Under the pieces are notes generated by a model that saw only the letters and a program-made list of their open reading frames with translations, did not search any database and was not told the origin of the DNA. Below are positions 1 through 50,042 of a DNA stretch of 64,000 nt, piece by piece. The stretch is from positions 558,001-622,000 of the forward strand of contig NW_026935559.1 of NCBI RefSeq assembly GCF_032062105.1. Direction: 5' to 3'. Positions within the stretch are counted from its first letter, which is position 1, and every line of letters begins with the position of its first letter. A program made the position numbers and the translations under genes. Source of the stretch: Saccostrea cucullata. Lineage: Eukaryota.

Positions 1-423
1 GCACTTCTCATAATATTTATAAAATGGAGAAAATACATGTATTCATGTCCTTTTTGCATTTTCATTATTTTAAGGTATTAACATATAATAATCATAAAAG
101 AATGATTCGAGATTTTTAATTATGGTGTTTTCAAGTAAAAGTACTCAACCGTGGGAAAATTTTGATTATTGTCAAACTGATTGCACCTTAAAATTTACAC
201 TGAAACCCATGGACAGAGCATATTGAAAAATGTAATATTGGAACTTCATAAAATCTATTAGTAAAAGTATATGCAAAAAAACTTCTTCATTAAACTATGA
301 AATAACATGAATCAAGGTCCCAAAATTAAAAGAGATATTAAAGTAATATATCAAAATCTTTTGATATAGATAATAAGGAAACTTTTTATACATAATATTG
401 CAAAAATGAAATTTTGCTTTCAG

Positions 424-1281
424 GATACAACACTAAAACTTCTTGTTTCGCGTGTGGTGTTCAAAGAGACAATTGGTCAGAGTGGGACAACGCTTTGGAA
501 GAACATTTTAAAGACAATGCAATGTGTTGGCACGTGTTATTGATGAGAAAAAAGTTTGAGTTGGAAAATCGCGCTCGTGAACCTTCCCATAGTGTTAAAA
601 AATTAATTTCCACTGCTCGACATCCTGAATACGCATCGGAATCATTACGCACAGCTTCTTTTCAAGACTGTAAAACTTCTTTGAAACAAAAGGGTTCAGA
701 ACTTGCAAAATCTGGAATGTACTACAAAGGTTTGAATAATATTTCAATTATCTTAATTTTTATAATGTATCTGAAAACTTTTTTTGTTTGATTATATTTA
801 ACGTTTGAAAAAAAGTTATGATTTACAAGTTCGAATCATTGGTAAATCTTGATAACAGTTCTTCTTTTATAAATTTCTTAACTTTTAAATTGAGGTGATA
901 GCAATTTTTTAACCTTATTATTTTGATTAAATGTTTTATGTTTTCTAAAACGTATGTTGTAATCCTTTAGGTTTTGAAAACAAAGTGCAATGTTTCCATT
1001 GTGGAGTTGTCATGTCCGTGGACATGAATGACGACCCAACAGAAATACACTCACGTTCATCTCCAGATTGTGAGTTTCTTCGTTATGAAGTACAGACATT
1101 GACTGAAGACGCGGATAGAATTAGAAATCAATTACTCTGTAAAGTCTGTCTTAGTTCTCAAGTAATGGTCACATTCCGACCATGTGGTCATCTGGCCACG
1201 TGTCAAGCATGCGCAGATCAATTACAGTCCTGTCCTATTTGTAGGACGACTATTTCTGATAAAGTGAAAACATACTTTTAA
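424..1281 (+). CDS. IAP/BIRC gene 1, 3' part (exons 424-729, 971-1281): end of one BIR, a second BIR and a C-terminal RING; 5' exons lie before the window
   Basis: BIR CFAC-x16-H-x6-C, then YASESLRTASF...GMYYKG|FENKVQCFHC-x15-H-x6-C, then RING CKVC..PCGH..CQAC..CPICR. AG at 422-423, GT at 730-731, AG at 969-970; both introns are phase 1. Confidence 0.92.
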
Positions 1282-14378: not shown

Positions 14379-17300
14379 ATGGAATATATATACTTTGTTC
14401 AAGTCGACATAGATGACAAGTCAACATCAGTTGGTTCTCTGCGTTGTTCGGAGTATAAAGATCAACTTCGACCAGGATCCCCATCGTGTGTTCCAAAAGT
14501 ATCAATCAATGATATGGAAGACACCAGACCCATTTTGTATGCATGTTGGAATTCAGGGGCAATAAAATCTTTCTTCTGTCAAATTGAATCAAGGAAAAGG
14601 GAGGCGAAAATTTCTTCTTTGTATTTTCTCAATTTGAGGGTACATTATTTTGCCATCGATTGGAATAATCAGGTATGTAGCATCATTGTGGAAGCTAAAA
14701 ACTTTGCAATAGGCCAAATTCTACTAAATTTGAATTTTCAAAGTGTTCATAATTCTAACGTACTTCCAAAGATAATGTTTCCAAATACTGGACAGCAGTT
14801 AAAGGTAAACAAATTGACAAGCAGAGAGAATAAAATCAAAATTAGACCTCCTTATATTTCTAGGGTTTGTTGGAGATCGCTAGATTTTCTTATAGCCTCA
14901 TCTTGTTTCTCTCTGCACAAACAATTTAGTGTTTTCTTCAATATAGAAGCTTTCCAAAAGGTGCATTTCTTATGTGAACTCCAATGGTCTATATTTTGTG
15001 AAACAAGCTCACCTTTATTCGTTTCAGTGGATTACATAGCAATAAAGGGTTGTATCATTGCAAAACGTATCTTTGAAGTCAATGCATCAACATTTCAAAT
15101 AGAAATGACATCTTTGCTTTTTTCACCGTGCAGCATGCTTCTTAGATTCACTTCACGTTTCAACAGAGCTCGGGATATGCATACAGCTTACCTTTTAAAA
15201 CAACTTTTAAAAGTCTTTGACCATAAACATATCGAAATTGATGAAAATTTGCAAACAAAAGAAAACAAACGAAACAAAGGTAACCCTTATTCAAGCGTCG
15301 ATCCGACGGAAATGTATTGTCTAAGGAAAAACGAACATTTTGAAAACTCTCTGATGACAAAAATCCACGAGTTCTTTCACAACAAATCTGAATCTGATTT
15401 TACTGAGAATTTGGATACTGTTGGTGAAAGAAAGCAAAAAGAATGGCTTTCTTATAATTTCAATAATTTTTTGGAAATTTCAATGTTCCCTGTTTTCCGT
15501 AGAAATGATCTCGAATACTCGTTTCAACAAATTTTGAATGGTACACCCTATCTATCGAGTGAGGTTATGAGATTTGAACATCATCGTTTGAGTTCATTTG
15601 CAAATTATACCAGCAGTGATATACCAAGCGTACTGCTGATGGCTAAGGCCGGGTGGTATGCTACAGGAAATGGAATGGAAACAAAAACATTCTGTTGTAT
15701 GATAACTCATACTGCTTGGAGAAAAGAAGACGATCCATTTCATGTGCACAAAGATCTTTATTACGAATGTGCATTTATTCTGGGTTCAAATTTGGATCAT
15801 GTATCAATTCAGAGAGAAAATCCTGATTGTCAACGACGTAATTCCGATACCAACAATTCAAATCTTTCTGAAATTTCGACGAGGATGCAAAACATGGAAA
15901 TTGTTTCATCTAAGCCAAAAGAAGATGAACGAGTAGAGGAGGAACATTTAGTAAATGAATTTAAAATTGACAGGCCTTCAAAGTTATCCTCGAAATTAAC
16001 TCGAAACACATCCACAGCCTGGAGTATTGACTGTCCTTCTCGATCATTATCAGCAAACAGAGGAGTAGACAACTTTTCTCGAAACTTACCCGTTTGTGAT
16101 ATAAACCGCAAGACAGAAGAATCTGCATTAAATGAAGTCAGATCATTTGAAAACGATAAAAGTAATAGAAAAATAGAATTTACAGATAGCGGAGACGGTT
16201 CCAAACACGTTTTACACGAGCCGGTACTACCACCCTTAGATTTCGCGAAACCAAAACATATCGAATATTCCACGGTGGGGATAAGAATGTCCTCTTTCAG
16301 TGGTTTTCCCATTACTAGTAGAAAGACAGCAAAAGAGTTTGCAGTGGGCGGATTCTACTACAGAGGATTTGGTGATAGAACCACTTGTTTTCAGTGTGGA
16401 ATTAGTTTGCAAGGATGGAGTGTAGATGATGATATATTTGTAGAACATGTCCGTTACAATCCATTATGTCAATACATGAGGCGATTGAAGGGTGATGATT
16501 TCATAAAACTAGTTATGACAGCAACTGAAAACCCCCAGGTAACTATAAATGAACACAAAATAATGTTTCAAAAGTCTTTGACCTATTTCTATTATATTTG
16601 GTGTGATAGTTTATAAACAACTTTAAGAACTGCTAGGCAATATTTTTCTCTATAGACACCACCTTCTCTTTCAAGTTTGAGGGGCGATAAAACATGTAAG
16701 TTTTGATTTTTTTTCCATAGAAATTATTACAATGTGTAGATAAATCTTGTTCATGAATACAGTTGTGGTATAAATTCTCTTCCGTAGCACCTCAGAATTC
16801 TTCTGCAAAAGATATAGCCAGAAAACTTAAAGAAATGGGATTTTCCAAAAATGCAATATCTGCAGCTTTAAACATAGTTGCAACAAAAAATGGTATGTTT
16901 GGTCTGCCTTTGACAATTCAGATTCTTGTTACTATTTAGAACTGTTTTGTCACCAATCATCTGAATAACGTATCAATTTGTTTATGCTGTAAAGGCAATA
17001 GAACACTTTAGTCGGCAATTTACAGGAAATGTGGAAGAAATAAATAAATATTAATATTATTGCTCATGTTGATTTTTCAGTTAGTTTTACTATCCAGGAC
17101 GTTCTGGATGTCGTTGTTGAAAATACAGACATCGAACATAGAAATTCAGTGAACACATCAATTACATCAACAGAGCAAGAAGAAAATGAAGAACATTGTA
17201 ATTCACGAGATAATCTTTCAAATGCTTGTTTTTCTGAAAGTACATCGACTAGTTTTTCAACAAACTTAACAAGTGCCTCAAAGAGCGATTTGGAATTTAA

Positions 17301-24360: not shown

Positions 24361-26643
24361 TACAATGTATATACAATGTATATATTCAAAAGAAAGGAGA
24401 ATTTCAAATTTTTAATTGAAGAAGTAGTTGTCTATGACATCAACAAATCCCGGTTTTAAACTCATCATGATTAATGTTGATAAAATGTAGAAAAGTAAAA
24501 CATATTGGAGTAACTGACTTTTGCAAAATTTAATGCATCAAAATCACATTACATTGATAATGCCCATGAATATGTTACGATATACCATGTATAATATTAA
24601 ATTTACTTTCTTGAGGAGGGGGGGGGGATAAGAAAAGTTGCATAACATATATTTATTAAGTAATGTCATGTCCTAAATTTTGAACTTATAGGGTAGAAGA
24701 AAAAAAATCAGAACATGTCAAAATCAGTAACATTCATAAAGAAGCGTCGTCGTGTACTGTATTTTCAAGGTTTTTCATTGATGATCCCCTGAGGTAAGAT
24801 TGTGATCACATACTAGTATGACATTTAAAATTATACATAAGAATACTCATATGTAGGAAACATTTCTAAAGTCTTTTTTATTTTCTTTCAGGCAGTATAT
24901 TGGATTAATTTATAAAATAGGAAATTTATTTTATTTTGTTTTAATTTTTGTCCATCAATAAATCTACGGTCTATCCAAATTTTCATTCCACTGTGATATG
25001 TGTATCATTTAGTTTTGAATCTGGAAATCAAGAGAATAAGGAAATAAAATTTATGTAAAAAATTAAATATTTCCTCGGTGTCAATGCATGGTTAAATGCT
25101 TCATACCTCGTGAAAAAAGGAAACTAAAATTTAGATATGAAAAAAATTCTCCCCAAAACAGCACTCAACACTCTTACATTGTCTACAGAGCCTTGAGGCG
25201 ACGAAAATGTTGTGAAAAAAGAAAAGAAAAATAAAATAGTTCGAAAAACATCATAAATTTTATCTAAAAATAGATTTAAAGTTATCTTGAATTGGATCAT
25301 GTTTTATTTAAATGGCTTGGTTTAAAAAGGTGTTTTCCATGCCTTATTTTCTGCGCTGATATATATCTGGTTTATTTTTGTCCAACTACGCCATTATCTT
25401 ATATCTAACTTGTTTGTCATTCCTTTTATAAGAAGTACTCAGCTTTTTTCTACAAAAATTAGTTTAAAAAGGTTAGAGAAATTAAAGATGAAATGATTTA
25501 TAAATTCTTTACTTATATTAGGAAGAGTCGCTTACTTCGAATGTTTTACTTTTATTGGAAATGTTTCCGTATTTAAATGTATCTTTTAAATGCGCAGAAA
25601 TAGACAGACCTAGTGCGCATTATGATATATTTATACATTATTTCATTTCTAGAATTTTAAAACAAGAACGCAAAAAACAACAAAAATGCGCAAAAAGTTT
25701 TAAAAACACGTATGCAGAAAGCTCGAGAATGATATATTCATACATTATTTCATCGCTAATTATTCAAAACAATATAAAAATATGAAATAAGGTAACTTCA
25801 GATGATTTAAATCCATTACTTTTGGGAGGTAATTCATTCAAGGGTTATCGTTATTTGCCGACACACCAGGAAGAAGCAATGGAGCAGGTACTCTTTCAAA
25901 ACATTTGCAAAAATTGTTTATTGTGGAAATGCATTTTATATGATTATATATATATATAATTATGGAACTAACTACATTGAACGTTTCTGAAAAAAAAAAT
26001 GAATTAAACATCAAATCTGTAGGGTTTTTAAAAAAAAAATGATTTTTCAACTTTCGTTTTGATAGATTAGCTTATACAGATTAAAGATTTTGATGAAATC
26101 AAATGTAATTTGATACATTTGGTTATATAGCATTGACTATTAGTAACATTTTCATTTGGATTACCTTTTAAAGTTTATTTATATATATTCCAACAGAATA
26201 TCTTTTTAAACATATATTTATATACACGCAAAAACATTGAGGAAAGTTTATATTATAAGGCTAAATATAACCTTTTCCGGGTCAATATTGATACTTGGGT
26301 TGTGTCGCGAGAATAACTATGTCAGCTTGCAAGGCTGGTATGAATATACAGGCTTGATACGAATAGTTTGGCGTCATGATAGTATATCGAAAATACTTAA
26401 TTATTATTAAATATATTTAAGAAAATTAAATGCATTTAAGATATCATATTTTCATTGTGTTACATTAAAAGTTTACATTTCAATTTAACTTATCTATCAC
26501 AAGCACCACTCTATTCAATAAAACTTTTTTTCAGGCGTATATGTGTACATATCTCTAAATTACTGAGACTGTTTTCCTATCTTCATACCAAATCCAATGA
26601 TGATTATTTAGTGACTTCCACATCAGACAATACTTACGGAATA

Positions 26644-29205
26644 ATGAAAAGCGGATTAAAATTATGTGAGGGCAGTATGAGGCTATTGATACCATTTGAT
26701 AAACTGAAAGATTGTTGCAACGAAAATGTAAATTTACATCAGACGAAGTTTTTACTCTCCTCGCCTAAAGCAGACATTGATTTGATTAAAAGGTTCTTTT
26801 CATATCAGGTACTTGCTGGTGTCCTTTTGTACAAAAGCTTTTTACATCAAATACTCATTGAATACATATTGCATAATGGAATAAATGTTTCCCCATTGGT
26901 ATGGGAATTCATACGCAGAAGTTCCATATCACAAGAAAATAACACTACAGACGCTGATGATCAGGAAAAGAATGATAACGAGGCTAGGGGAGAAAGGTAC
27001 AAAGATCCTTTAGGGAAAATAATCAAAAGCCCTGTAATTATAAATTTTCATATCAGTAATACTTTAATAACTTTTAAAGCATCTTTAAAAGATATTAAAG
27101 TAACTGAAAACAAATTAAAAGAGAAACATTTAACACTGCAAATGTTATCCACTGTGAATAAAGAGAGAGATGCCTTTCATTGTAAGGAAAATAAATGGTA
27201 TAAGGAATTATTTCTGCGTGAAAGAATAAATCCCCCCATGCCATTTCTGATATTGCCAGGTACAATAAACCAAAGTTTTAATAAACTCTCCCAAGGAACA
27301 CCGCCTGATGATTTTGAAATAATGAAATTTGAATTTCACAGATTAAGCTCATTTAGCAACTTTACCTTTCCCGATGTACCTAGTTCTATAATTTTGGCCA
27401 AAGCAGGATGGTTTGCAACAGGAAGCGAAAAAGAAACAAACACTTTTTGTTGCCTCAAAGTATATAGTAGATGGAAAAGAAGCGATGATCCGCATTATAT
27501 TCACAAAATGTTATCACCTACTTGCTTCTTTATATTAGGGAAAGATATTGGACAGATTTCATTTCATGATAGGGCTTTGAATGACAACAATGAAGCATCT
27601 GTGGATAATTCAAGGAATAATGGTTACCTTCCTGGAAATCAGCATAGACATTATAGTAATACATCCCAAGAAATTTTATACCAGAGAACTAACGATGTGG
27701 AATCACTGACGGATGAAATTGGCCAATCTTACACAAATCCAAAGGTTTTCAAAGAAGAATTAAGCGAGTGTGACAACGAATCGTTTGCCCAAGAAAGCGA
27801 AAATCCTGAAATACATTCTACAAACAATGTATCGCATTTGAATTGGAGCCTATCAGATGCAGTATATCCAAACCAATCAGAAATTGAAGCGAGGATAGAA
27901 AGCTTTTCAATGATTAATAAGTCTCATTATGCATTAAAAATTGGACCGGGCTCAGAAAATTTTGTTATTGCGAATAAAACCGCGGAGGAATTTGCTAGAG
28001 CTGGTTTATTTTACCGTGGATTCCGCGACAGAACTTCTTGTTTTTACTGCGGGATAGGTCTTCAAAATTGGACCTCCCTCGACAATATCATACTGAGACA
28101 CTACCAATCAAGTGGAAATTGTCCTATAGCTCAGGCATCAATACATGAAATAGATGCTGATAGAAATACATCATCAAGTAAGTCAATTTAAGTGTAAAAA
28201 CCATATAAAAATTGCAATAGATTACATGTATACACCTTCAAAACAAAAATTCCGCCGAAATATGACTGAAAAATTGCCGACTCGACGTTAAAAAATATAC
28301 AATCAATCAATCAAAACACAAAAAAAAATTTATATAAGTACCTGGAATTTGCAGGACAGGCATCCAGAATCCTCTTTAAGTGATCTATAATTTTTTTAAG
28401 GTGAGAATAGCGTTGCGGCTTCTCCGAATCAGAGCAGAGGGTATCCTCCAGATATGGAGGGAATTTGTGCTGAACTAGATGAAATGGGATTTGATGAGGA
28501 GTTAATCAAAGCGGCCATTGAAAGTTTAGGGCATCGGGGAAGTGAGTAGAAATGAAAAAGAGATATGTTTAATACAATAAATATATCTTTAAACATAATG
28601 TTATGATCAATTACACTTTAAATTATATTTACAGATAACAATATACTCAGTATATTATTGATACTTAATGGTGATTGTTCAAAAATTGTGTGTACTTTTA
28701 AAAAGTCTGACAAGTTTTCGTATTTGAAAAATAAATAACAAGATATATATTTTTAAATTCATGATCAGTTACCATAAGCCTAATAATTATACTTTCAGTG
28801 ACATGCACCAAAGAGAGAATTGTGAATGAAATTCTAGACAATAGAGCATCCTTGCATTCTGGATCGTCGATTTCTGGGAGTGCCGAATATAATTCATCAG
28901 AATATCAAGAATCAATAGAACCCTTGGAAAATCCGCGCATAGAAACGGCTTCCGGTGAAAATGCCGAAAAACCAACAGCGCCTGGTGAAAAGATTGATAC
29001 GACAGCATCTACTTCAAACCTGAGAGAACAGTCTGATGATGAACTGCGCAGGCGCGTCACGTGTAAGGTCTGTTTGTCGGAGGAAGTAGGGGTTCTTTTT
29101 CTACCCTGTAGTCATTTGGTATCTTGTGTCAGTTGTTCTCGGAGGTTAAAGAAGTGCCCCTTATGTCGAAAACATATTCAAACAAAACAACCCATGTTCT
29201 GGTAA
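26644..29205 (+). CDS. IAP/BIRC gene 3, at least 693 aa (exons 26535/26644-28177, 28401-28541, 28799-29205): orphan N-terminus, BIR1 (Cys->Thr), BIR2 with insertion, UBA, RING
   Basis: RLSSF..AGWFATG..TFCC-x16-H-x6-C; AGLFYRG..CFYC-x16-H-x6-C; UBA LDEMGFDEELIKAAI; RING CKVC..PCSH..CVSC..CPLCR; phase-1 GT-AG junctions. Start is uncertain: acceptor at 26534, first in-frame ATG at 26644. Confidence 0.88.
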
Positions 29206-29648: not shown

Positions 29649-32442
29649 CTAATATCGGCATTTACATGGCTTGCCCTGTAATGAAAAAAAAAAAATTCTC
29701 TTTAGTATCCTTGCATTCAAAAGACATAAATCGTGATCTAAACGTAGAGCTGAAGTAGAAACATACCGCCTTCAATTCACAAATGTAGTAGTGTTCCTTC
29801 ATACAGTTTTCTACGTGCCAGTGGTATCTATACGTGTGCCACATTATACCACAGTGGTAGTCCTTGTGTTGGTGGAATTCCGGCTCGTCTCCAAACCAGT
29901 CAAACTTGTGACACAGCGTGGTGCTGAACCCCCACCTCCAGCTGTGTTTTTCTATGTCAGATAACTCATTAAGTCCTATCCAAGCCCCCTGGTCAACTGA
30001 ATATGAATACAAACATGTTTTATTTCATGTCAAGCGTGATACATTTTCGACTGATTAAAAAGAATAAAATTCAATGTTATCAATTTAAAAAAATATCTTA
30101 AATCTGCATATGGCTTTTGCTTTATATTTGGACATATGTTGTCCCTTGCTATGCACGACTGATTAACGTATAAAAACTAACTTAAAGAATCTATTACATA
30201 AAGAGAATGTCTATATGTTAAAAGCGTACACAAACATTGAGCTAATAATATTTTCCAGCAGATAATTTGAACAATGGTGAACTTATTTTTTTTTAATACA
30301 TGTTGATTATTAAAATCTGGTTTTATATTCTATAAAATTATATAAAATACTTGAATATTTTTCAAACTAACTTTCATTGGATATAAGAAAATTTCTGAGG
30401 TAAGTATTCTCATGGGCAGTGTTTATGACCGCCAAGTAGCCGCCCATCGACGCACAAGTCATCTGCAAGAAAAACACCAAAATCCAAAACTTATCTTCAG
30501 GTGTTCAGACCATTATTCTGTTACATGCATAGAATGTAATTGTACATTTTTTCAAGAACTATTAGACACAAATTTTGTTTGTTTGTTTGCATTTTTAACG
30601 TAAATATTCAAAGCGAAAATTTGATATACTTTAATTAGTGGGAAGATTTTTGCAAATATTCATTATGATAATGTGTAGTATTGATTTTCATCTCGTTGTT
30701 ATTTACTTTTTGAAAAATATTTCAACACATAAAAACACTATATTCTAGAGACATCTAAACTTACCGTAGCTTTATACCAGCTAAGTTCGTCTCTGCTAAA
30801 GTAATAACAGCTATCGTCATACTTTAACCAAGCATAGGGACAGCTATTATTTTCAAGGTGTGGCTCTACTGTATTCAGTCTGAATGTTTTAGGCTGTTTC
30901 GGGGGTGGAGGAGGAGTTTTTAGTCCGCTGATATCTATTCCAGCTTTGTAAGATCCAAGGTGGTATCCTTTCTTGTTGTATCCCTTAACATGTGATGGTC
31001 GGTACTTTTTAAGATAAGTCTTGTAGTATGATTGGTAGTTTCCTTTAGAATAGGATCCGTCAAGATAATGCAAATAAATTTTTGGATAGTATTTTTGTAG
31101 GTATGTCCAGTACGCCTGACTATACCCACCTCTGTAGTTTCCTGTGTGGTACAAAATGTTTGTCCCAGAACCTCGAGCCCTATAAGAATTTTTCGATTTT
31201 TTGTATTTTTGTTTCTTAGAGTAACCTCTTTTCATGTTTCGTTTGCCTTTCTTTCGATAATATGAAACCTTGTAATATTTAGTTTTTCGATATCTTCGAA
31301 ACGGTCTGCGATAACGTCGTCTTCTTACACGGCGATAAGTTGAACGGTACTTCCGTCGAATGTAATATCGACGGCCAAGAAACGCATTCCTATATGAACG
31401 TTTTACAATATGGTGCGAACTTGTAGCACTCGTCAAATTATTATGGGATTGTCTTTGTGGTATGAAAACTGGATTCTTTAGTAGAGATCTCAGTCCATAC
31501 CCAACTACAGCTGCAGATTTTATTTTTTGTGCCTTAAATGTTGGACTTATAGATATAAACAGTGGATATCCTTTTAAAGAACCAGAAAGAAGCAGACTTC
31601 GAGGATGGACCTGTTGAGTCGAGCTAGGCAATGCACCATATACCCTTCCTTTTGAAGACAAATTCTTTATCAATTTCCACAAAGACTTTTGAGATAAAGT
31701 TGGAGTAAATTTCACAGAAGGATAAGAATTTGAGTTTTCATTTGTGTTTATTTGTTTCAGTTTATGTAATGGCTTAGCTATTGGCTCACGGTGCAGAACC
31801 CAGCGATACCCAGAGTGTGTACCTAGGTTATAGCGCTTCGCCCGCTTTTTACCAGTTGTTACTTGTGCCTCATCCATTTGATTCATGATTTTTCGAGCAT
31901 TAAGTTTATCCATGATATCATTCATCTGAGGCAGGGGTTCCCCAGGGTTTGAATCATTAATAGTTGTTGGTTCTGGTGTGGTATTAGGGTCAAAAGGTTT
32001 CGTTACCGTTTCGTCCCACGAGTAAGATTCATTTGGTTTAGCTGTTGTTTCCCACGAGTAAGATTCAGTTGGTTTTACCGTTGTTTCCAACGAGTACAAA
32101 TCAGTTGATTTTGTTCCAATTTTTTCTAATCTTTGCTTTTGTCTTTCTTTTTGGGTTTCCTCTGTTTTTTCTAATTCACTTTCGACACGAGGATCATTTG
32201 GATAACTATTATCTTGATCATCACTCCCGGTTAAACCATATGTTGTGAAAGCTAGGAAAAAACGTTTTTATTGACTCTAGTTTTTGATAACGTACTAGAC
32301 AAATAAATTTTCATGATGAAGACTATATCAGCTAATATTTAGTTTCCATTATCTTTTTAATAACCACAAAAAAGATTGAAAACTTACCCCATACATAGAG
32401 AAGTAAAACGAGTGTTAGTTCAACAATGGATACTGATGTCAT
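29649..32442 (-). CDS. Secreted 629-aa protein: signal peptide, acidic/Thr-rich repeats, Arg/Lys/Tyr-rich domain and C-terminal C-type lectin domain (exons 32442-32388, 32251-30765, 30462-30372, 29996-29767, 29675-29649)
   Basis: MTSVSIVELTLVLLLYVWA signal peptide; CTLD CPYAWLKYDDSCYYFS..WYKAT|MTCASMGGYLAVINTAHEN..|AWIGL..EPEF..HCG..WHVENC..YICE; terminal exon GKPCKCRY*. All junctions are GT-AG and in phase. Confidence 0.9.
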
Positions 32443-35635: not shown

Positions 35636-37052
35636 TTACAGTTGAATGGAAAATTATGTCATAGAATGGGAAATTTACCTATATTTTTGTCATAATATCT
35701 TGAAATATAAATTCATTTTTTTTTTTATCAAAACTGCATTTATGTCGTTTACTTTATAAAAGAAAAAAAATTATGCCTGTTTTTTGTGATAGATATGCAA
35801 AATAGTGATAGAGACAGTGATAATATTCATGCAAATATTTTAGATAAGGCATTACCCCTTCACTAAATTAAGAGAAGATTTAAAAAAGATTTTTGATACA
35901 TTGATTTCGTAATACATTTTCTTATTTAAACGTCACAATTTTACATCTTTTTTAAAAATTAATTTAGAAAATTATTTACATAAAAAACATAATATCATGT
36001 TTATAATATTTTTGTAACAACAGAGGTTTAAATGAATATTACAAACATTTTAAAAGTGCAAATCGGCCAAGTTTAACTTGCATTTACTAAAGCAACCAGC
36101 CATTATCCCAGTTACTTCTTACAACAGTTTTAATTTTTTCTTGTCAAAGTATTAAAACATGCTCATGAAGACCTGACTTAACAATATATTTAGTTGCGTA
36201 CCTCCTTGATTTTCCGTATTAAGGTGAGGTTTTTTTCAACATAAAATCCTAATCAAATTTACATTTTAACTTCTGTGTGTAAATTGTAAAACATACAATT
36301 TTCATTATTTATGATTAAGCATTTGTTTCGTCATAAAAACCTAAAAGTTCTTAGTACATATATCCATATTAGTATGATACGCAGAGAAGAACATAACATT
36401 TTGAAAATTTCAGCAAACAATAATTCTCGAAAACCTCATTCAATCGAACTATGCATATTTTTATGAAAAAGTAAAAATACACATATTTTAACATTTTTTT
36501 CCGATTTGATTTTTATAGCTTTATTTTAAAAAAAAATGAAATGTTATAATGGTTTTGAAAGTGTTCATTAAAATCTGTCAATTTGAAACAAAAAGATATC
36601 ATTGTGATTGATTCTTTTTTAAGATTACACTTATTAGGTATGTTTTGGCCAAAGTGATTTGACTGTTGGGAAAAATGTTTAGTTATGAATAATATAAGAA
36701 TCATTATAGCATTATTTATTTCGATAATGTTTATAAAACTTACAAAGTTTTACAAAATGAAATATTTTAAGGACTATCTGAAGTTTTTAGATTATGCAGT
36801 TTAAATGCTTAATGTACCTCAAAAGCACCAAATTACATAGAATTATGTTGAATTAGCATTTTTGAAAGTCATGACAAATTCTACCCGGCCGATATCAAGT
36901 TTATTCTCAAGAGTCTTGTGATTCCATACGTGACTTGATGTATTATCAGACTGCAGCTATGGGTGGCAATTTTAGCCGCGATGACTCGCCCCTTTTGTTC
37001 GGAAGTCACGATTGATGAGCAACGGCCTTGTGAACAGGGGGGGTCCTCGGGG

Positions 37053-37175
37053 TATATAAAGAGCCTCCAGGCTTTTAATTTTACATCAAACCTAAGGTTA
37101 CCTCTGAGCTGGACTTAGAGGAATCGGATTCCAGGTCTAGTTATTTGCTGTTTGTCGCGGAAGATATTGAGGAAG
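37053..37175 (+). promoter_or_regulatory. TATA box and non-coding first exon of orphan secreted gene A, ending in a GC-AG donor
   Basis: TATATAAA at 37053-37060 in a GC-rich context; AAG|GCAAGT at 37175/37176; the next acceptor at 37552 directly precedes the ATG. Confidence 0.65.
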
Positions 37176-37552
37176 GCAAGTTATTCTATTTATTTATATT
37201 GATAGCAAATTTTGCAAACAAAACCTTTGGCATCGCTTTTTAAAATACTAAAGAAATTAGTTTTAAAAATGGAAATATCTGTTTGTGTTGAATTCTAAAT
37301 AATTTTAACAGTCAAAATCTTCTTTCTGAATGATAAAATGCGATGATAAGTAGTGAAGTTTTGAAATGAAGTTAAAGTACAAATTAAAAAGATGCAAAGT
37401 TTATACAAAAATTATGCAATCCAAGCATCCCCTGTCACAAATTACAAAAAATACAAAATGTAAACAGAAAAAAAATCAAAGATACTACTTGTACATGAAC
37501 ATTACATGTTAACTTAACCTGTAAAATAAATTTCCCTTTTTTTGCCTTTAAG

Positions 37553-38583
37553 ATGCGTTGCCTGGTCATCTATGCTGCATTAGCTATATTTGCTGGTCAA
37601 ATATTTGCTCAGGTTACCGAGCCAGTACCCAGGAATGGTAAATTGGTTTCCTTTTTAAAAAATGAAATATTAGATAAAGTGGCTAAAACTGAAATTCACT
37701 TTCCCTAGATCTTTTCAACTTTCTTACGACTAAGATAAATTTTGACAACTCTTTATATACAAAATTTCTCTAAAAGATCATCACAATACCGGTATATCAT
37801 AATATTTTAATGCAATATTTTTTTACTGTAACATGCACCTTCCAAAACTTAGATTTTAAAAAAATCTAAATTTATATACATACTCTAACTGTAAAACAGT
37901 CAATAATATTTTCATATTAATTATATAGCTCTATTTACACATGTATAAAAAAAATTTCATTTACTCTCTCAGGAACTGAAAGGCCTCCAATAGAAGAAAA
38001 GACCGTGGCTCCAGGGGGTGAAAATATTACGGGAATTCCAACAGAAGGTGACAAAACGCCACCAGCTCTCCCTGGCGTTGATCCATCCCCCGAACCCGAC
38101 CACGACGGAGAAGAAACCGGAAAAGGAAAAATCTGGAAGAATCGCATCGCCAAGTGGAAGAAAATGCGATTGAACAAGAAAGGTCCAGCACAAGAGAAAC
38201 CAGAAATCAAAGATGATGAAGAGCCCGGACAAGAAACACGGGATAAGGCAAAAGGACCAAGACCTAATGGGAAAACTGGTAATTATTTCTTACTCATTTG
38301 TATCTAGAGAACAGCAATTAAATATATTTTTACCATTCATTTACGTTTCCAGTTGCTAAAATACAAGTACATGTAGTTTATTCATCACAAGAACTAAAAA
38401 ATGTTATGAATATCTTTTGTGTAGAAAAAAATAAAAATGAATTCACATAAAATTATATTTTATCTGAGTTATTAATTAGAATTCAACTTAAATGAAGAAA
38501 AAATAAATTACATCATTTCAGATAAGGAACGTCGACCAAAATTTGGAAAACGTAGAGAAAGGGGGATGAAGATCTTTCCATGA
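37553..38583 (+). CDS. Orphan secreted protein A, 150 aa (exons 37553-37637, 37973-38278, 38522-38583)
   Basis: Signal peptide MRCLVIYAALAIFAGQIFA; Pro/Gly/Glu-rich region; cationic core KIWKNRIAKWKKMRLNKK; tail DKERRPKFGKRRERGMKIFP*. Phase-1 GT-AG introns; AATAAA at 38778. Confidence 0.85.
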
Positions 38584-38844
38584 AGTCATTTATTAAGCAA
38601 AGAAATGCCAAAAAATGTTTTAAGTTTAATATTTCATTGAAAAATTGGAAATCAAAGGTGAAGCTATATCAAAAACATTTTTCGTAGAATCTTTTTATTT
38701 CATTTGATCATGTAAAAAATTATTAACATCGTTATCTTATGTTTTTGTTATTTTTTTTATTTGTTGAAATTTTTAAAAATAAAAGCATTTCTTCATTCTG
38801 ATAAACCTTTTATAGTTTGTTCATAAAACAAAAAGCTGTGTTTA

Positions 38845-39070
38845 ATACTGTGGAATAATTAAAAATCATGGGGGTCAGTGATCGTGGATTGCTTAAAATT
38901 AACAGGTTTGTGAAGACGTATTTTCATATACATGTATTCTCCTACACATACAAAATGAAATATGACTTCGTAATCATAATTAACGATTCATGGAGAATGT
39001 TAGTTCATGTATGACGGATGCCACAAATACCACAAAAATTGAGCCACTACGAAATCTAATGATTTCACAT
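38845..39070. mobile_element. Short MITE-like element (TACTGTGGA-type)
   Basis: TACTGTGGAATAATT..TCATGGGG ... CCACTACGAAATCTAATGATTTCAC imperfect inverted ends; a related copy lies at ~58100-58270. Confidence 0.5.
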
Positions 39071-40964
39071 TTAGCTTTTCCAAGACCAAAACCGAATCTG
39101 TAGACTTCTAAAAGCATCAAAAATTGGATAAGGTGTCATGGAGAGATAAGAATTTACTGCTGTAAACTTGTTACATCTGATACGTGCCTTTTTCATCATG
39201 GAATAAACGAAGAAGTTATACTAACCAATTCAGTAAGACAATAGTGGCCTTAAAATTTATATGAAAGACGTCAGTCATCATTTGACCGAACGAAAACAAT
39301 ACCATAGTTTCTAAAGAACATTTCATTGGGAAACGTCTTAGATTTAAGTCAGTTTTTCAACTTTCCTTGTAAGTTGATCTATATTGTATTCTATGTAAGT
39401 TGATCTATATTGTATTCTATGCACGAGAAAATCACACATAGTTTTTTTTTCAAGACAAGATGAAATTAGCATTATAAAAATACTTTGAGTATAAAAATTA
39501 ATTCTAGTTAATCTCCAATTACTTTTTTTTCAAATTGTAAGACCAGTTTATCATAAATAGAACAAAATATCGATAAACATCAAATATTTAATGCTTTCTA
39601 ATCATATTTGAATGGTATATGTTCCTTAAATGAAAGAACATTTGTCACTGTATATTTGCAATAGAAATAAATAATGGCTAGTTTTTTATGTACAGATATT
39701 TGTTTCCCATTAAAAGCGACAACTAAAAAACCGGAATTAATGTTTTTAAAGAATTGAAAAAATAAATCTTATTGAGAAGCTTTACTGTTATGCAAGTTAC
39801 TTGCAATTAAAAAAGAAAATGTACTATACATGTTTACCTTGAATCTAAATTACTAATAAACAGAAGAAAATGCGAAACAAACTCCCATGCATTTTCTCAT
39901 TTCATTTTTTGTCTGATTTCATTTTGTCATATAACGACAATATACTACATGTAGTTTCGTCAATAAATCAAGTATTTTATATGATGTAAAGCATTGACGA
40001 TGTAGACTTTTTAAATACTTACAAACACGATGGACTTCATATAATGTTCCAATAATACCTTTCGATCTGCAGTAAAAAAAAATTCAAACTGTTTTAGGAA
40101 ATCGTGACGAAAGAAATGTAGTCCCATTTAAAACAAGATTTAAATTTCTTCAAATCGTATTATTTGATATGTTAACACTTGGATATATATAATTAAACAC
40201 ACAAAAACATTCAAACTGACCTACCTTCTACCTGAATACTACGATTAAACAGCTTTATATTTGACAAGTAGGTTTAGAAAAGAATGATTTATTTATGATT
40301 TATTATGATAACGTTATTTTCAAATTCAAAATTCAAAATTTTAATTTTTTGTGTTCTTTTAGTCTAAGAATGCTTGAAAACTGAAGAAAGTTCATAAGCA
40401 GTATTTTTTTCTGTTTTGTTTGTTTTTAATGTTTGTTCATATACTTATTTTTTCTGTATTTTTTCTGTTTTGTACTAAAAAATGAAATATATATTTGGAA
40501 CTTCATTTAAAATTTTTTTTTCCTTCTTTACGAATTTCTTAAACATTTTTTGAGGAAAAATAATGACTAACTGCACTGCAGGTATTAAATGCTTTGAATC
40601 TCGTTTTTAACCCACAGAGCTTGGGTAAATACAAGAAAATTTAAAGCATGTTCACCGACTTGTTAATTCCATTCTGTTGCACCATTTAAATGACAGTATT
40701 TATATAAAAAATTTAGAAATGTTGTATACATTAAGCATTTTTGAGTTTAAAATGTGTGTCCACTTTACAAAAATATACAAAAAGGTCCAGTGGTCCTGTT
40801 TTTCTAATGAAATGAATCGTGACTCGTATGTTGGTCTAACTAATAAACCTTCCAGGTACCTTGCAGGTATTAAGAAATCAAATGGCCTACCCTATTATTA
40901 GGAACTCACGATTTTTATGTAATGAGGTATGCTGGAGTGGAACTGAGAGGTTACTAATTGAGGA

Positions 40965-41064
40965 GCAGCAGCGTTTTTCGTCACAGTGGTCTCCTCTCTG
41001 AGCTAGTCTGAGGGGTCATTCTTGGACTTCTTCTGTCTTTTGGGCTGCTGCAATTTTAACCAAG
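40965..41064 (+). other. Probable non-coding first exon of orphan gene B
   Basis: Strong donor CAAG|GTAAAG at 41064/41065; shares CTCTGAGCT..GAGG with exon 1 of gene A. Confidence 0.5.
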
Positions 41065-41182
41065 GTAAAGGGTTTAATTATTTTACTATAGAAAGATCAT
41101 TAACTACCGGCAGGTCCTGGAATGTCAATTTTGCATAATTTAATTCGATGCACAATTTATGATAGCAACAGTTTTGAAACAA

Positions 41183-41185
<3 letters not shown>

Positions 41186-41260
<75 letters not shown>
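41186..41260. repeat. (TA)n microsatellite
   Basis: Direct reading. Confidence 0.98.
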
Positions 41261-41261
<1 letters not shown>

Positions 41262-41479
41262 GAAAAAAAATTGGTTTCTAGATTATGATAAGCATCGGAT
41301 TGTAAGATAACTGATAAATTAATTAGTAAAGTAACAATTAATCCCGCATTGTGCAAATGGAAAATAACGCTCAGCTAATCTTTTCAACGTTGTCTGAAAT
41401 CAAAACTGGTTTGAAAATCACCATTGTGCAATTATATACAAGGTTTGTGATTTTTTTATTATAACAATACGTGTGTGGT

Positions 41480-41620
41480 NNNNNNNNNNNNNNNNNNNNN
41501 NNNNNNNNNNNNNNNNNNNNNNNNNNNNNNNNNNNNNNNNNNNNNNNNNNNNNNNNNNNNNNNNNNNNNNNNNNNNNNNNNNNNNNNNNNNNNNNNNNNN
41601 NNNNNNNNNNNNNNNNNNNN
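41480..41620. other. Assembly gap (N run)
   Basis: Run of n characters. Confidence 1.
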
Positions 41621-43046
41621 CATCAAAAAATTAATAAAACAGCTTTAATTTCTTGATTTTTTTTTTAAATAATTGTTTTCCAAATGTTTCTTAATAAATA
41701 AGATATTCAAGACAATGTTCTGAACACAACAATTTCGTTCTGTAAGATAGGCTGATAAAATTAATTAGATAGTGAAGTATCAATTGATTCCACAATATGC
41801 CAATGGAAATAATTCTCAAAACTGATTTTTTTAATTATCAGTGTAAGGTTGATTCTATGAATAACGTCATTGTGTTAGAAGAAAAGGACACTTTCAACTG
41901 ATTAAAGACGAAATAAATTAAATTGAATGACAAACGTGATGACTTACATATTCCCTTATTTATGAAGCATTTTTTTGTATCTAGATGTTTTTGATTGATC
42001 GCTGTTAATGTTAAATTATTCTTTTTCACTGAAAAAAAAAATAAACAAATCGGCATTTTTAATGTTTGTACAACCATTTTGTTTCATCAAACTAAACAAA
42101 TAATCAAAGTTGAAAAAAAATTTCAACAACCGATAAAAAAAAAATTTTTGTTTGAAAAAAGATAAATTGATTATTATATCATTATTTAACACTTCCAAAA
42201 GTTAGGTGAATGTATATCATTTTTTTGCATTTCAAGGAAAAGTATACTATTTGCTAATTATAAAGACGATGAGAGCCATTTAGAAATTAGGATTTATGAC
42301 AAATATGATTACAGAATCATATTCCCTTATTTATATATTCTTTTGTTTGATGTTTTGATTGATCACTGTTAATGTTAAATAATCCTTTTTCATTGAAAAA
42401 TAAACAAATCGGCATTTTTAAAGTTTGTTCTACGGTTTGCATTCATTGAACTAAACAAACAATCAATTAAAAAAATAAAAACGATAAAAATAGATAAATA
42501 AATAAGATAAATTGCATGCTAATAAAATGTGTAATATTAGAGTTAGATGAGTGTTTTTTTTTATTTAGAGACGTGTTTGTAATAATATAATGAAACAATA
42601 AACCTTCGCGATTCACAAATATTTACAGAATTTTAATCCAGTATATATACTCATTTGTTTGAAATTTTTGTTTTTCTCCCTTCCTACAGGGTTTTAAAGA
42701 TTTTACTTGACGTTAAACGTAGATCGAATTAATATATTAGCTAACCAAAGAGTACAATTTTGCTTTAAATCCTTTGTAATATTTACAAACCTACACCTGA
42801 ACCTCAAACAGCTATATTAATTGCAATGACCCATTAGATTACCAAAAAAATATATATATATTGAAGGAATGACGTGATTAGTACGTAATAGAGCACAAAC
42901 CATGTGTACACTTTCAACACCTATTTTTGTACATAATTGATCCATTTTTTATTTTATTAATTGTTCCCTTAACATGGGCTTTCATAGTCTTGAAAAAAAA
43001 GCCTAGTAATTGGGGAAAAAAAGAATTTCTTTTTTTTTACTTCCAG

Positions 43047-43761
43047 ATGCGTAGCTTGATTCTGCTTGCATTCATTGGTGTGTTCACAGCGCAAGTTTTC
43101 TCCCAACGCGTTGGTATGCTTTACATCTATTAAAGAATGCAATAGTGTGATTTTATATCTATCATAGAATGCAATAGTGTGATTTGCTGTTTATCTTTCT
43201 TTCGTGTATGCTTAAACAAATCTAACAAACCAAAATACTAAGAAATCCTGTAACATTTTATATGTGTATTAACATAATTATAAAATTTGAAATTCAAAGG
43301 TAATGTTGATAAAACCTTACCACCTAAAGATGGAGCAATAAGCAGAAGACCGAAAGTGGATGACAAAACTAAAGGACCCGGAGACGGAGGAATAACAAGA
43401 CCAGTTGTCAATGTCAGAACGAGGCAACCAGGAGGGGTAACAAGAGGACCGGAAGTTGGAGATAGAACCAAGGGACCACGAAATGGTAGAGTTACGAGGA
43501 GACCTAAAAATGATGACAAGAAAAGGAAACCAAAGAAATTTATCAAAAAGATCAAGGGAGGTAAGTCTATTTAAAAAAGTGTTGCAGTTAGTGAGATATC
43601 CCAACATTTTTTTTCATTGTTAAATAATGCTTTTAACCTTTATCTCTTTAATAGGTAAAGGACTTGGAAATATGAAAAAAATGAAGCAGAGGTTTACAAG
43701 AAAAATGAAATCCTTCATGAAGATGAAGAAAGGCATGTTCAGGAAACAGAAACAAAATTAA
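43047..43761 (+). CDS. Orphan secreted protein B, 144 aa (exons 43047-43113, 43300-43560, 43655-43761), paralog of gene A
   Basis: Signal peptide MRSLILLAFIGVFTAQVFS; four ~17-aa repeats (D[K/R]TKGP.DG.[I/V]TR.P); Lys/Met-rich tail. Same exon and phase layout as gene A; AATAAA at 43877. Confidence 0.87.
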
Positions 43762-44084
43762 ACCAAGTGAACACAAGATTTAGAGTATATGCCTTACAGA
43801 ACGTCTTCCAACGCACTTACCCTTTCTCCATGCAAAAATGTTTTTTAAAGCTATCAAAATCAGTTACTAATTTGAAAATAAAACAAAATATTTCATTTGT
43901 TTTTATTTTTTTATTCATATTAAAATTTATTTGCTATTAAAATCAAAAGTATATAGAATCTGAGTATATTTGCTATAGCATTTTTGAAATACGATTGATG
44001 TTGAATTCGATAGACACCTTATTTGATTTTCATCTCGTACATGTAATCAGTGTACCTAGCTCATACATTCTTTAGAGTCATCGA

Positions 44085-44810
44085 ATGAACGATGGCGACA
44101 ATGAACAGCAGATCGGAAGTAAACATACTTCTAAAATCATCATGATCAGAGATGGGATCAGGTGCAATGAAAGAAGCAAGCATCTCCTGTGGACCGATCA
44201 CACTAGCCATGTTCTCCTAACCATGATCAGACAAACGGAGAGGTCCTTGAATGTGAAAAATGTTAGTCACATTCTGTAGTCACATAATGATGGTTATACG
44301 ATTCATATTTGCTGATAATTAAGGCCATCTTATCGACCATGAAACTTGGAAAATGTTGATTTCAAACCGCGTGGCGCAGTGGTTAGAACGTCTTCTCTAG
44401 AGTCGCAAAGTAAGAGTTGATCATTACGTTGCGGGTTGAATCCCACAGTGGGGCGAGGAGACCGGTCCTTCATATGAGACCGTATAAACAGAGGTCGCTT
44501 GCTGCAATAGGTGCTGGCACGAAAAAGATTCCTCTCAGCTCAGTGGCCCTGAGTGCCGAGTATAGGACAGAATTTGTAGTTCTCAACCGGGCAAGTGGTG
44601 GCGTCTCCATATGAGTGAAAAAATCTTGAGGGGGACGTTAAACAACATATCTATGCAAACAAACAAAATCAAACAAGAATTAAGATGTTGGTGTCCTTGT
44701 TTCATATATTTAATAGATTTGTTCGTTAATAGCTATAGCTATCATTGCTTTAGATATTGTTCGTACGTAGAACATCCTCTTGCGTATCAAATCATCTGGA
44801 AAACAATACC
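44085..44810 (-). mobile_element. Degenerate Penelope-like 3' fragment interrupted by a SINE
   Basis: Tail GATGGGATCAGGTGC..GCAAGCATCTCCTG at 44151-44190; RT-end similarity resumes after 44680. Confidence 0.65.
44367..44668 (+). mobile_element. tRNA-derived SINE
   Basis: A-box GTGGCGCAGTGG, B-box-like GGTTGAATCCC, body, and 3' GGGACGTTAAACAAC...(CAAA)n tail. Confidence 0.8.
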
Positions 44811-49054: not shown

Positions 49055-50042
49055 TGCATGGTCAGGTCTTTACTTCAGAAATGATCGGTGAGGTCTTTGG
49101 TAGAAATGGTCAGTCAGGTCAACGAGGTTATTCACATCAAGACAATCATATGGTTAATATAATATTCAAAAAAGATAGCTATCATTAATTATTTCTATTT
49201 GGTCAGGTCATTTCATATTTGGTCAGGTCATTTCTTTAATTATATTTGGTCAGGTCATTAAATTTAAATTTCATGATCATGATGATATACTGGGAAAACT
49301 GTTTCTAGAAGCATTTAAATTTTACCAAAAGTAATAAACATCATAATGAAGAATATTTTCTAAAATGTATCTAATATTTAAAAAAAAAGAAGCTATTATC
49401 AATGATTTTTATTCGGTCAGGCCATTTCATTTTTGGTCAGGTCATTTCATATTACCGGTCAGGTCATTAAAATTCCTTGTTATAAGCTAATAATTGAGGT
49501 AAAAAATGATTCTAAAACAATTTTATCCAAAGTTTTAGCCATTATAATGAGGATAATTCTGTAAAACTTATCAAATATTTAAAAGATATAACTATTATTG
49601 ATGATTTTGGTTTTGGTCAGGTCAATTCATATTTGGTCAGGTCATTTCATATTAGGTCAGGTCATTAAAATTCCATGATATAAAATAACACTTGAGGTAA
49701 AAATGATTCTAAAACCATTTTATCCAAAGCATTAACCATTACAATGAAGAAAATTTTTAAAAACTTATCAAATATTTAAAAAATATAACTATTATTGATG
49801 ATTCTGGTTTTGGTCAGGTCAATTCATATTTGGTCAGGTCATTACATTTCCATGAAATGAACAGATAAATAACAACAAATATGGTGAAAATGTGTATATT
49901 AATAATTATTTAACTTAATTTTATATTATTATCAAGAAAATATTCTAAAAAATATGATAATTGGTCTTATAATAGTGATTTTGACGAATTTTATGTTGGT
50001 CAGGTCAGTCAGGTCTTTAGTAGGTCAGGTCTTTAGTATCTC
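49055..50042. repeat. Satellite with GGTCAGGTCA motif clusters in ~190-230 bp higher-order units
   Basis: Clusters of 2-3 TTTGGTCAGGTCATT(TCATA) at ~49200-49260, 49413-49468, 49614-49666 and 49811-49842. Confidence 0.85.

What the first reader, a model, noticed from the sequence alone, without database searches (positions are those of the whole stretch)
37053..43761. Paralogous pair of orphan secreted cationic-peptide precursors (candidate new antimicrobial or matrix peptide family)
Seen: two tandem genes that appear only as fragments in the ORF track share an architecture. Each has a non-coding exon 1 with a common CTCTGAGCT..GAGG block, an ATG right after the acceptor, and three coding exons with phase-1 introns. 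Signal peptides are related (MRCLVIYAALAIFAGQIFAQ vs MRSLILLAFIGVFTAQVFSQ), but the Cys-free mature regions are very different. Gene B ends in 49 residues with 23 K/R, no D/E and M/F spaced 3-4 apart (amphipathic helix). Gene A has a cationic Trp-containing core between acidic segments. Established: a conserved signal peptide with hypervariable cationic mature region is typical of AMP precursor families such as mussel myticalins. I do not recognise these as defensins, big defensins, Cg-Prp, molluscidin or myticalins. Inference: an undescribed effector family; a shell or cement matrix role is the alternative.
Basis: partly seen in the sequence, partly recalled or inferred. Interest (0 to 1): 0.82.

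Follow-up and report, generated by a model that had tools for sequence, protein, structure and literature searches.

The report
Oyster-only secreted cationic-helix gene pair
Two neighbouring oyster genes, with no relatives found outside true oysters, encode secreted, mostly floppy proteins whose best-conserved part is a strongly positive helix; they look like precursors of a new type of antimicrobial or polyanion-binding peptide, but no activity has been tested.

Summary
Real. The window is Saccostrea cucullata. Gene A equals RefSeq XP_062581442.1 (150 aa, uncharacterised). Gene B (144 aa) has no database protein, but a related species' RNA contigs from three studies show all its splice joints; exon 1 joins the ATG exon directly, so the N gap lies only in a 5'UTR intron. 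A and B are syntenic in S. echinata; A has Crassostrea orthologues; only two copies were found in this genome, and no kin outside Ostreidae. The cationic helices are the most conserved parts (dN/dS 0.07-0.15). B reads as signal peptide, four 18-aa repeats, one unblocked KR site and a 46-aa amphipathic polycationic tail; A has one cationic helix in a disordered chain without flanking cut sites. Not a myticalin, Cg-Prp, molluscidin or defensin. Best guess: host-defence peptide precursor (0.4); rival: mucus/matrix polyanion binder (0.3). A conserved exon-1 block is either a CNGGN hairpin or a DPE-like promoter element. The scan noted other, Cys-containing cationic orphans in this genome; not this family.

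The parts
37005..37059 (+). Gene A promoter: conserved TCACG motif and TATA box (TATA at -32 from the inferred start)
   Evidence: Conserved in S. echinata and two Crassostrea species
37085..37175 (+). Gene A non-coding exon 1 (start inferred; probable GC-AG donor at 37176)
   Evidence: Alignment with orthologues; GC donor kept in S. echinata; spliced exon 1 seen in C. gigas RNA contig L058
37097..37125 (+). Conserved 29-nt exon-1 block: 8-bp stem with CUGGA loop, also RGWY at +27 (DPE-like)
   Evidence: 26/29 identical to C. gigas against about half in the rest of the exon; pairs 94.6% standard; weak in full exon context
37553..37637 (+). Gene A exon 2: 20-aa signal peptide plus 8 aa
   Evidence: helix 2-21 in model
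37973..38278 (+). Gene A exon 3: Pro/Glu/Gly-rich disordered region with one cationic helix (about residues 76-96, about 38115-38175)
   Evidence: core dN/dS 0.07-0.08
38522..38583 (+). Gene A exon 4: basic tail with a Gly-Lys-Arg-Arg amidation-like site, stop codon
40905..41064 (+). Gene B promoter remnant and non-coding exon 1 (TATA degenerate; block at 40996; donor after 41064)
   Evidence: Homology to A and to S. echinata; 5' loose ends of RNA contigs match its 3' end
41480..41620 (.). Assembly gap, inside B's 5'UTR intron; not filled, not looked up
43047..43113 (+). Gene B exon 2: signal peptide
43300..43560 (+). Gene B exon 3: four 18-aa Pro/Gly/Arg/Asp repeats, single unblocked KR site, start of cationic tail
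43655..43761 (+). Gene B exon 4: Lys/Met/Phe amphipathic helix, net +14, stop codon
   Evidence: dN/dS 0.09 and 0.15

Best explanation
A and B arose by tandem duplication of an oyster-specific gene for a secreted, largely disordered precursor that carries a conserved polycationic helix. Shown: gene structure, splicing, secretion signal, homology, purifying selection on the helices, predicted helicity. Inferred: B is cut by a proprotein convertase at its only unblocked KR site, releasing a 46-residue Lys/Met/Phe amphipathic helix that binds anionic microbial membranes and acts as a constitutive host-defence peptide in secretions. A exposes a shorter cationic helix, probably without precise release, with its acidic N-terminal part as an internal counter-charge.
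For: Signal peptide and spliced transcripts. B tail: helix pLDDT 92, hydrophobic moment 0.57, shuffle p 0.007 for the best window, conserved in S. echinata. All other dibasic sites in B exon 3 are followed by Pro in both species and the one free KR is kept. dN/dS 0.07-0.15 on the cationic helices. Sequence held in runs of 7 studies of a relative, so probably not a rare stage-specific gene. Neighbours are a C-type lectin and IAP genes. Low-hydrophobicity cationic peptides such as molluscidins are reported as antibacterial in oyster gill (PMC5577615).
Against: No activity or peptidomics data. Mean hydrophobicity of the helices is low (about 0.1; negative for the Crassostrea A core) and Crassostrea A puts Asp/Glu in the core, poor for membrane lysis in seawater (own knowledge). 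No expansion or hypervariability, unlike myticalins and Cg-Prps. B's pro-region is cationic (+6 to +9), not anionic. A has no conserved convertase sites round its core. No kB or AP-1 consensus in about 350 nt of promoter (simple pattern). A Lys just after the KR may hinder cleavage.
Confidence: 0.4

Rival explanations
1. Secreted structural or polyanion-binding protein of mucus, connective/storage-tissue matrix, periostracum, shell or cement. The intact disordered chain bridges sulfated glycans or acidic proteins through the cationic helix.
For: Most of each protein is low-complexity Pro/Gly/charged and disordered, with internal 9/18-residue periodicity. Low hydrophobicity and stable low copy number fit a matrix component. 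The head-to-head neighbour is a lectin with an Arg/Tyr/Lys-rich region. A lacks cut sites round its core.
Against: No Tyr and no Cys in either mature protein, unlike DOPA adhesives and KRMPs (own knowledge). B's tail is significantly amphipathic and preceded by a conserved free KR. The C. gigas transcript seems to come from gonad libraries, not mantle only (inferred).
Confidence: 0.3
2. Reproductive secreted protein (acrosomal, egg-coat or gonad-duct secretion) whose cationic helix engages gamete surfaces, with its mRNA controlled through a Smaug-type element.
For: The only spliced Crassostrea copy found is in SRR12564931 and SRR12564943, which bracket six C. gigas mature-gonad runs (PMC10294476) of an 18-gonad study (PMC8353863). 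The exon-1 hairpin loop fits the CNGGN consensus in 6 of 7 sequences.
Against: Sample identity is inferred from accession order; the two runs are not among the mature-stage runs, and early gonads contain storage tissue and haemocytes. Held in 7 studies of a relative. No positive selection. The hairpin is weak in context.
Confidence: 0.15
3. Peptide-hormone or neuropeptide-like precursor giving an amidated C-terminal peptide from gene A.
For: Gly-Lys-Arg near A's C-terminus in S. cucullata, S. echinata and C. gigas.
Against: The residues before the site are poorly conserved while the internal helix is the conserved part. The site is absent from the C. ariakensis-type exon 4 and from B. Not in the supplements of a C. 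gigas ganglion neuropeptide survey.
Confidence: 0.07

Closest known systems
Myticalins / modiocalins (Mytilidae; PMC5577615, PMC12294457)
   Same: Cys-free, secreted, lineage-restricted; non-coding exon 1, ATG at the start of exon 2, phase-1 intron; dibasic site; cationic segment.
   Different: Four exons instead of three; signal peptide alone on exon 2; no anionic C-terminal extension; unrelated signal peptide; cationic part conserved, not hypervariable; two copies.
Cg-Prp (C. gigas; PMC3390580)
   Same: Oyster, signal peptide, pro-region, C-terminal cationic part (B).
   Different: Cg-Prp has a 19-aa anionic pro-region, a 16-18 aa Pro-Arg-Pro peptide and 4-18 gene copies. B's tail is a 46-aa Lys/Met helix after a cationic pro-region.
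Molluscidins (PMC5577615)
   Same: Lys-rich linear peptides of oysters with low hydrophobicity.
   Different: Molluscidins have no signal peptide and are unstructured dibasic repeats; these genes have signal peptides and a helix.
Linear amphipathic helical AMP precursors (dermaseptin/cecropin type; from memory)
   Same: B layout: signal peptide, pro-region, KR, C-terminal amphipathic cationic helix.
   Different: No sequence similarity found; pro-region not acidic; helix far more charged and less hydrophobic; not diversified.
Smaug recognition element / ZCCHC14 pentaloop (PMC4053848, PMC9282228)
   Same: Exon-1 stem with CUGGA or CUGGU loop; CUGGA is the loop cited for HAV stem-loop Vb.
   Different: S. 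cucullata B loop loses the third-position G; no compensatory double changes; the fold is not dominant in context; the block also fits a DPE position in gene A.

Membership tests
Myticalin | Three exons; exon 2 holds signal, mature peptide and dibasic site | tested here: not met
   Four exons; exon 2 holds only the signal peptide plus 2-8 aa
Myticalin | Anionic C-terminal extension after Lys-Arg | tested here: not met
   B tail net +23; A C-terminal part neutral to basic
Myticalin | Conserved myticalin signal-peptide consensus | tested here: not met
   Compared by eye with the consensus in PMC5577615; no myticalin among the hits
Myticalin | Hypervariable mature peptide, multigene family | tested here: not met
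   dN/dS 0.07-0.15 on cationic parts; two copies found
Myticalin | Gill-specific expression and antibacterial activity | not testable with these tools
   Run tissues are coded; no assay
Cg-Prp | Short anionic pro-region plus 16-18 aa Pro-Arg-Pro mature peptide | tested here: not met
   144-150 aa precursors, helical Lys-rich cationic parts
Molluscidin | No signal peptide; dibasic repeat peptide | tested here: not met
   Signal peptides present
Defensin / big defensin | 6-8 Cys array | tested here: not met
   No Cys in the mature regions; no Pfam hit
KRMP / DOPA adhesive proteins (features from memory) | Cys/Trp basic domain with Gly/Tyr tail, or Tyr-rich repeats | tested here: not met
   No Tyr or Cys in mature A or B
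Linear amphipathic helical AMP (functional class) | Secreted precursor with cationic amphipathic helix | tested here: met
   Met for the B tail; weak for the A core
Linear amphipathic helical AMP (functional class) | Processing to a free peptide and membrane or antimicrobial activity | not testable with these tools
   Only a conserved free KR site
Homeodomain helix 3 / penetratin | Invariant Trp-Phe-x-Asn-Arg-Arg spacing in a nuclear homeodomain | tested here: not met
   No Phe, spacing shifted, orthologues drift from the motif, no Pfam or PDB hit
Smaug recognition element | CNGGN loop on a stem | tested here: inconclusive
   6 of 7 loops fit and 53 of 56 stem cells pair, the only such hairpin in 159 kb scanned on both strands, but pairing probability is 0-0.17 in five of six whole exons
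DPE core-promoter element (consensus from memory) | RGWY at +28 from the initiator | tested here: inconclusive
   +27 or +28 in four A genes with TATA at -31 to -33, but +21 or +22 in B; start sites inferred

The most novel reading that the evidence does not exclude
Gene B encodes the first dedicated (signal-peptide, convertase-processed) amphipathic helical antimicrobial peptide of a bivalve, a class a 2025 paper says has not been described in bivalves (PMC12294457). It is conserved rather than hyperdiverse, and its mRNA carries a 5'UTR Smaug/ZCCHC14-type hairpin kept across oyster genera that controls when the effector is made.
Probability: 0.12. Interest if true: 0.7.

Novelty: new variant of a known kind. 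Interest (0 to 1): 0.42.

Why it matters
Oyster AMPs known so far are mostly Cys-stabilised, and amphipathic helical AMPs are stated to be undescribed in bivalves (PMC12294457). A conserved, expressed, largely unannotated oyster family with a directly synthesisable 46-aa tail gives a cheap test and would add an effector relevant to aquaculture disease. If it is a matrix or gamete protein instead, it is one more oyster orphan, now with a correct gene model, orthologues and a mapped conserved segment.

Tried and rejected
Pfam on exons and full proteins: nothing significant. PDB by profile: best E 0.38. ESM Atlas: only Sp185/333 at 0.75, below the usable level, and no hit for the C. gigas protein. 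Rfam: no real match. Word search with B exon 3: no hit. B's joined protein was not searched: spliced models were searched exon by exon by reference, and full-length A only through database ids. Paper search for motifs and LOC ids: none. URP20 is a 12-aa unrelated peptide. Genome-wide pattern search for the exon-1 block: only gene A matches exactly and one-mismatch counts equal the control (46 vs 42). First pair count used wrong columns and was redone. PHAT search for Smaug was uninformative. B in Crassostrea could not be tested: contigs end about 1.6 kb after A. The N gap was neither filled nor overlaid; reads were laid only downstream of it. Coded runs were not identified, so tissue stays unknown. 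Fold search was not run: the A model is disordered (pTM 0.19) and the B tail is a single helix.

Full report
Observation. Gene A (coding 37553-37637, 37973-38278, 38522-38583) is letter for letter the RefSeq protein XP_062581442.1, uncharacterized LOC134243227 of Saccostrea cucullata, which also identifies the genome. Gene B (43047-43113, 43300-43560, 43655-43761; 144 aa) has no database protein. In 159 kb of the contig these two are the best-scoring signal-peptide-type ATG exons. Searches of the whole genome by DNA, protein and profile return only these two genes.

The gap. The N run lies in B's 5'UTR intron, so no reading frame crosses it. I laid RNA contigs only downstream of it (41700-44200). 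In three studies of a related species (about 95% identical; probably S. glomerata, inferred), contigs cover exactly the three coding exons, skipping 186 and 94 nt as predicted. In the gap-free S. echinata locus the same exon 1 sits 245 nt before the ATG. The gap was not filled. Spliced models were searched exon by exon; the joined B protein was left out.

Relatives. The exhaustive search of 1.84 billion representatives with A finds only itself, the S. echinata orthologue and one Logan protein. The echinata locus keeps the order lectin, A, B. The Logan proteins are exon-3 ORFs from Crassostrea-type DNA runs: one series next to a run cited as C. ariakensis, others taken to be C. gigas from neighbouring accession numbers and memory. 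They have the same four-exon gene. One spliced 169-aa version with signal peptide (P0043) comes from SRR12564931 and SRR12564943. These numbers bracket six C. gigas mature-gonad runs (PMC10294476) from an 18-gonad study (PMC8353863), so they are probably earlier-stage gonad samples. That is an inference, and such samples contain storage tissue and haemocytes. No Pfam, PDB, Atlas or literature match was found. The family is so far limited to Ostreidae.

Anatomy. A is predicted disordered except for the signal peptide and one helix at residues 76-96. The helix has net charge +6 to +8 in all species, and Crassostrea versions carry Asp/Glu and a Trp/Leu polymorphism. B exon 3 is four 18-residue repeats (period 18, p 0.016 and below 0.002) in which every dibasic site is followed by Pro except one Lys-Arg, kept in S. 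echinata. After it come 46 residues whose exon-4 part is a confident helix (pLDDT 92) with hydrophobic moment 0.57 but mean hydrophobicity 0.10. B exon 3 aligns to the Crassostrea A exon 3 above all 1000 shuffles, and both show 9/18 periodicity. Promoter and exon 1 are homologous too. So A and B are whole-gene duplicates, not a shared signal exon on unrelated mature regions.

Selection. dN/dS is 0.08 (vs S. echinata) and 0.07 (vs C. gigas; synonymous sites near saturation) for A's core, against 0.65 and 0.17 for the whole exon. It is 0.09 and 0.15 for B exon 4. Signal peptides give 0.14-0.44.

Mechanism. Most likely (0.4) these are precursors of constitutive host-defence peptides, B being cut at its one free Lys-Arg to release a polycationic amphipathic helix. 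The layout and selection are shown; cleavage and activity are inferred. Against it stand low hydrophobicity, a cationic pro-region, no expansion, and no cut sites round A's core. A polyanion-binding mucus or matrix role (0.3), a reproductive role (0.15) and a neuropeptide role (0.07) remain. Tissue is the missing fact: runs of 7 studies hold A's words but are coded.

Exon-1 block. It can form an 8-bp stem with a CUGGA or CUGGU loop; outside one unstable position, all five cells with a one-sided change remain G-U pairs, and none is compensatory. The loop fits the CNGGN Smaug/ZCCHC14 consensus (PMC4053848, PMC9282228) in 6 of 7 sequences, and it is the only such hairpin among 164 pentaloop hairpins in the 159 kb scanned on both strands. 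However, the stem has pairing probability 0-0.17 in five of six complete exons, S. cucullata B lacks the key G, and the same letters read RGWY at +27/+28 from the inferred start of A, where a DPE would lie. B keeps the block at +21/+22 and its RNA extends further upstream, which favours a position-independent element. Undecided.

Comparison. Not a myticalin (exon layout, no anionic extension, not hypervariable), Cg-Prp, molluscidin (has a signal peptide) or defensin (no Cys), and not URP20. The penetratin resemblance noted in s1-722013 is not conserved as a homeodomain motif. B works, if anything, like a helical AMP precursor, a class said to be undescribed in bivalves.

Verdict. A real, expressed, undescribed oyster family with a conserved cationic helix; function untested. 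Other cationic secreted orphans have been noted in this genome, so the class is not rare. Interest 0.42.

Noticed in passing
window 29665-32250 (-): C-type lectin gene with a long Arg/Tyr/Lys-rich region, head-to-head with gene A; syntenic in S. echinata.
   Followed up: partly
window 414-791, 14379-16616, 26455-29205 (+): Tandem IAP genes (BIR and RING domains) upstream.
   Followed up: no
L017 10001-10250: The RefSeq S. echinata model of gene A (XP_061176124.1) adds 78 residues of a transposase-like exon from about 8 kb upstream of the true exon 1, hiding the signal peptide; probably an annotation error.
   Followed up: partly
window 37176: Gene A intron 1 probably uses a GC donor in both Saccostrea species, GT in Crassostrea; not confirmed by RNA.
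   Followed up: partly
window 41065-43046: B's first intron is about 2 kb against 245 nt in S. echinata, with an (AT)37 run, the gap and a duplicated unit of about 150 nt (41989-42120, 42353-42479); a strong acceptor at 42690 is not used in the relative's RNA.
   Followed up: partly
window 37005-37015 and 40905-40915: A TCACG motif, with CGTGA further upstream, is conserved in all six promoters; it resembles paired-domain or bHLH-PAS sites (from memory).
   Followed up: no
P0016, P0018, P0027, P0043, L046: Crassostrea alleles vary in the core (Trp/Leu, one Trp/Gly); one contig has a frameshift after the core and one lacks the exon-3 donor; these may be assembly errors or null alleles.
   Followed up: no
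window 49168-50040: 197-bp tandem repeat rich in GGTCA direct repeats (nuclear-receptor half-site-like).
   Followed up: no
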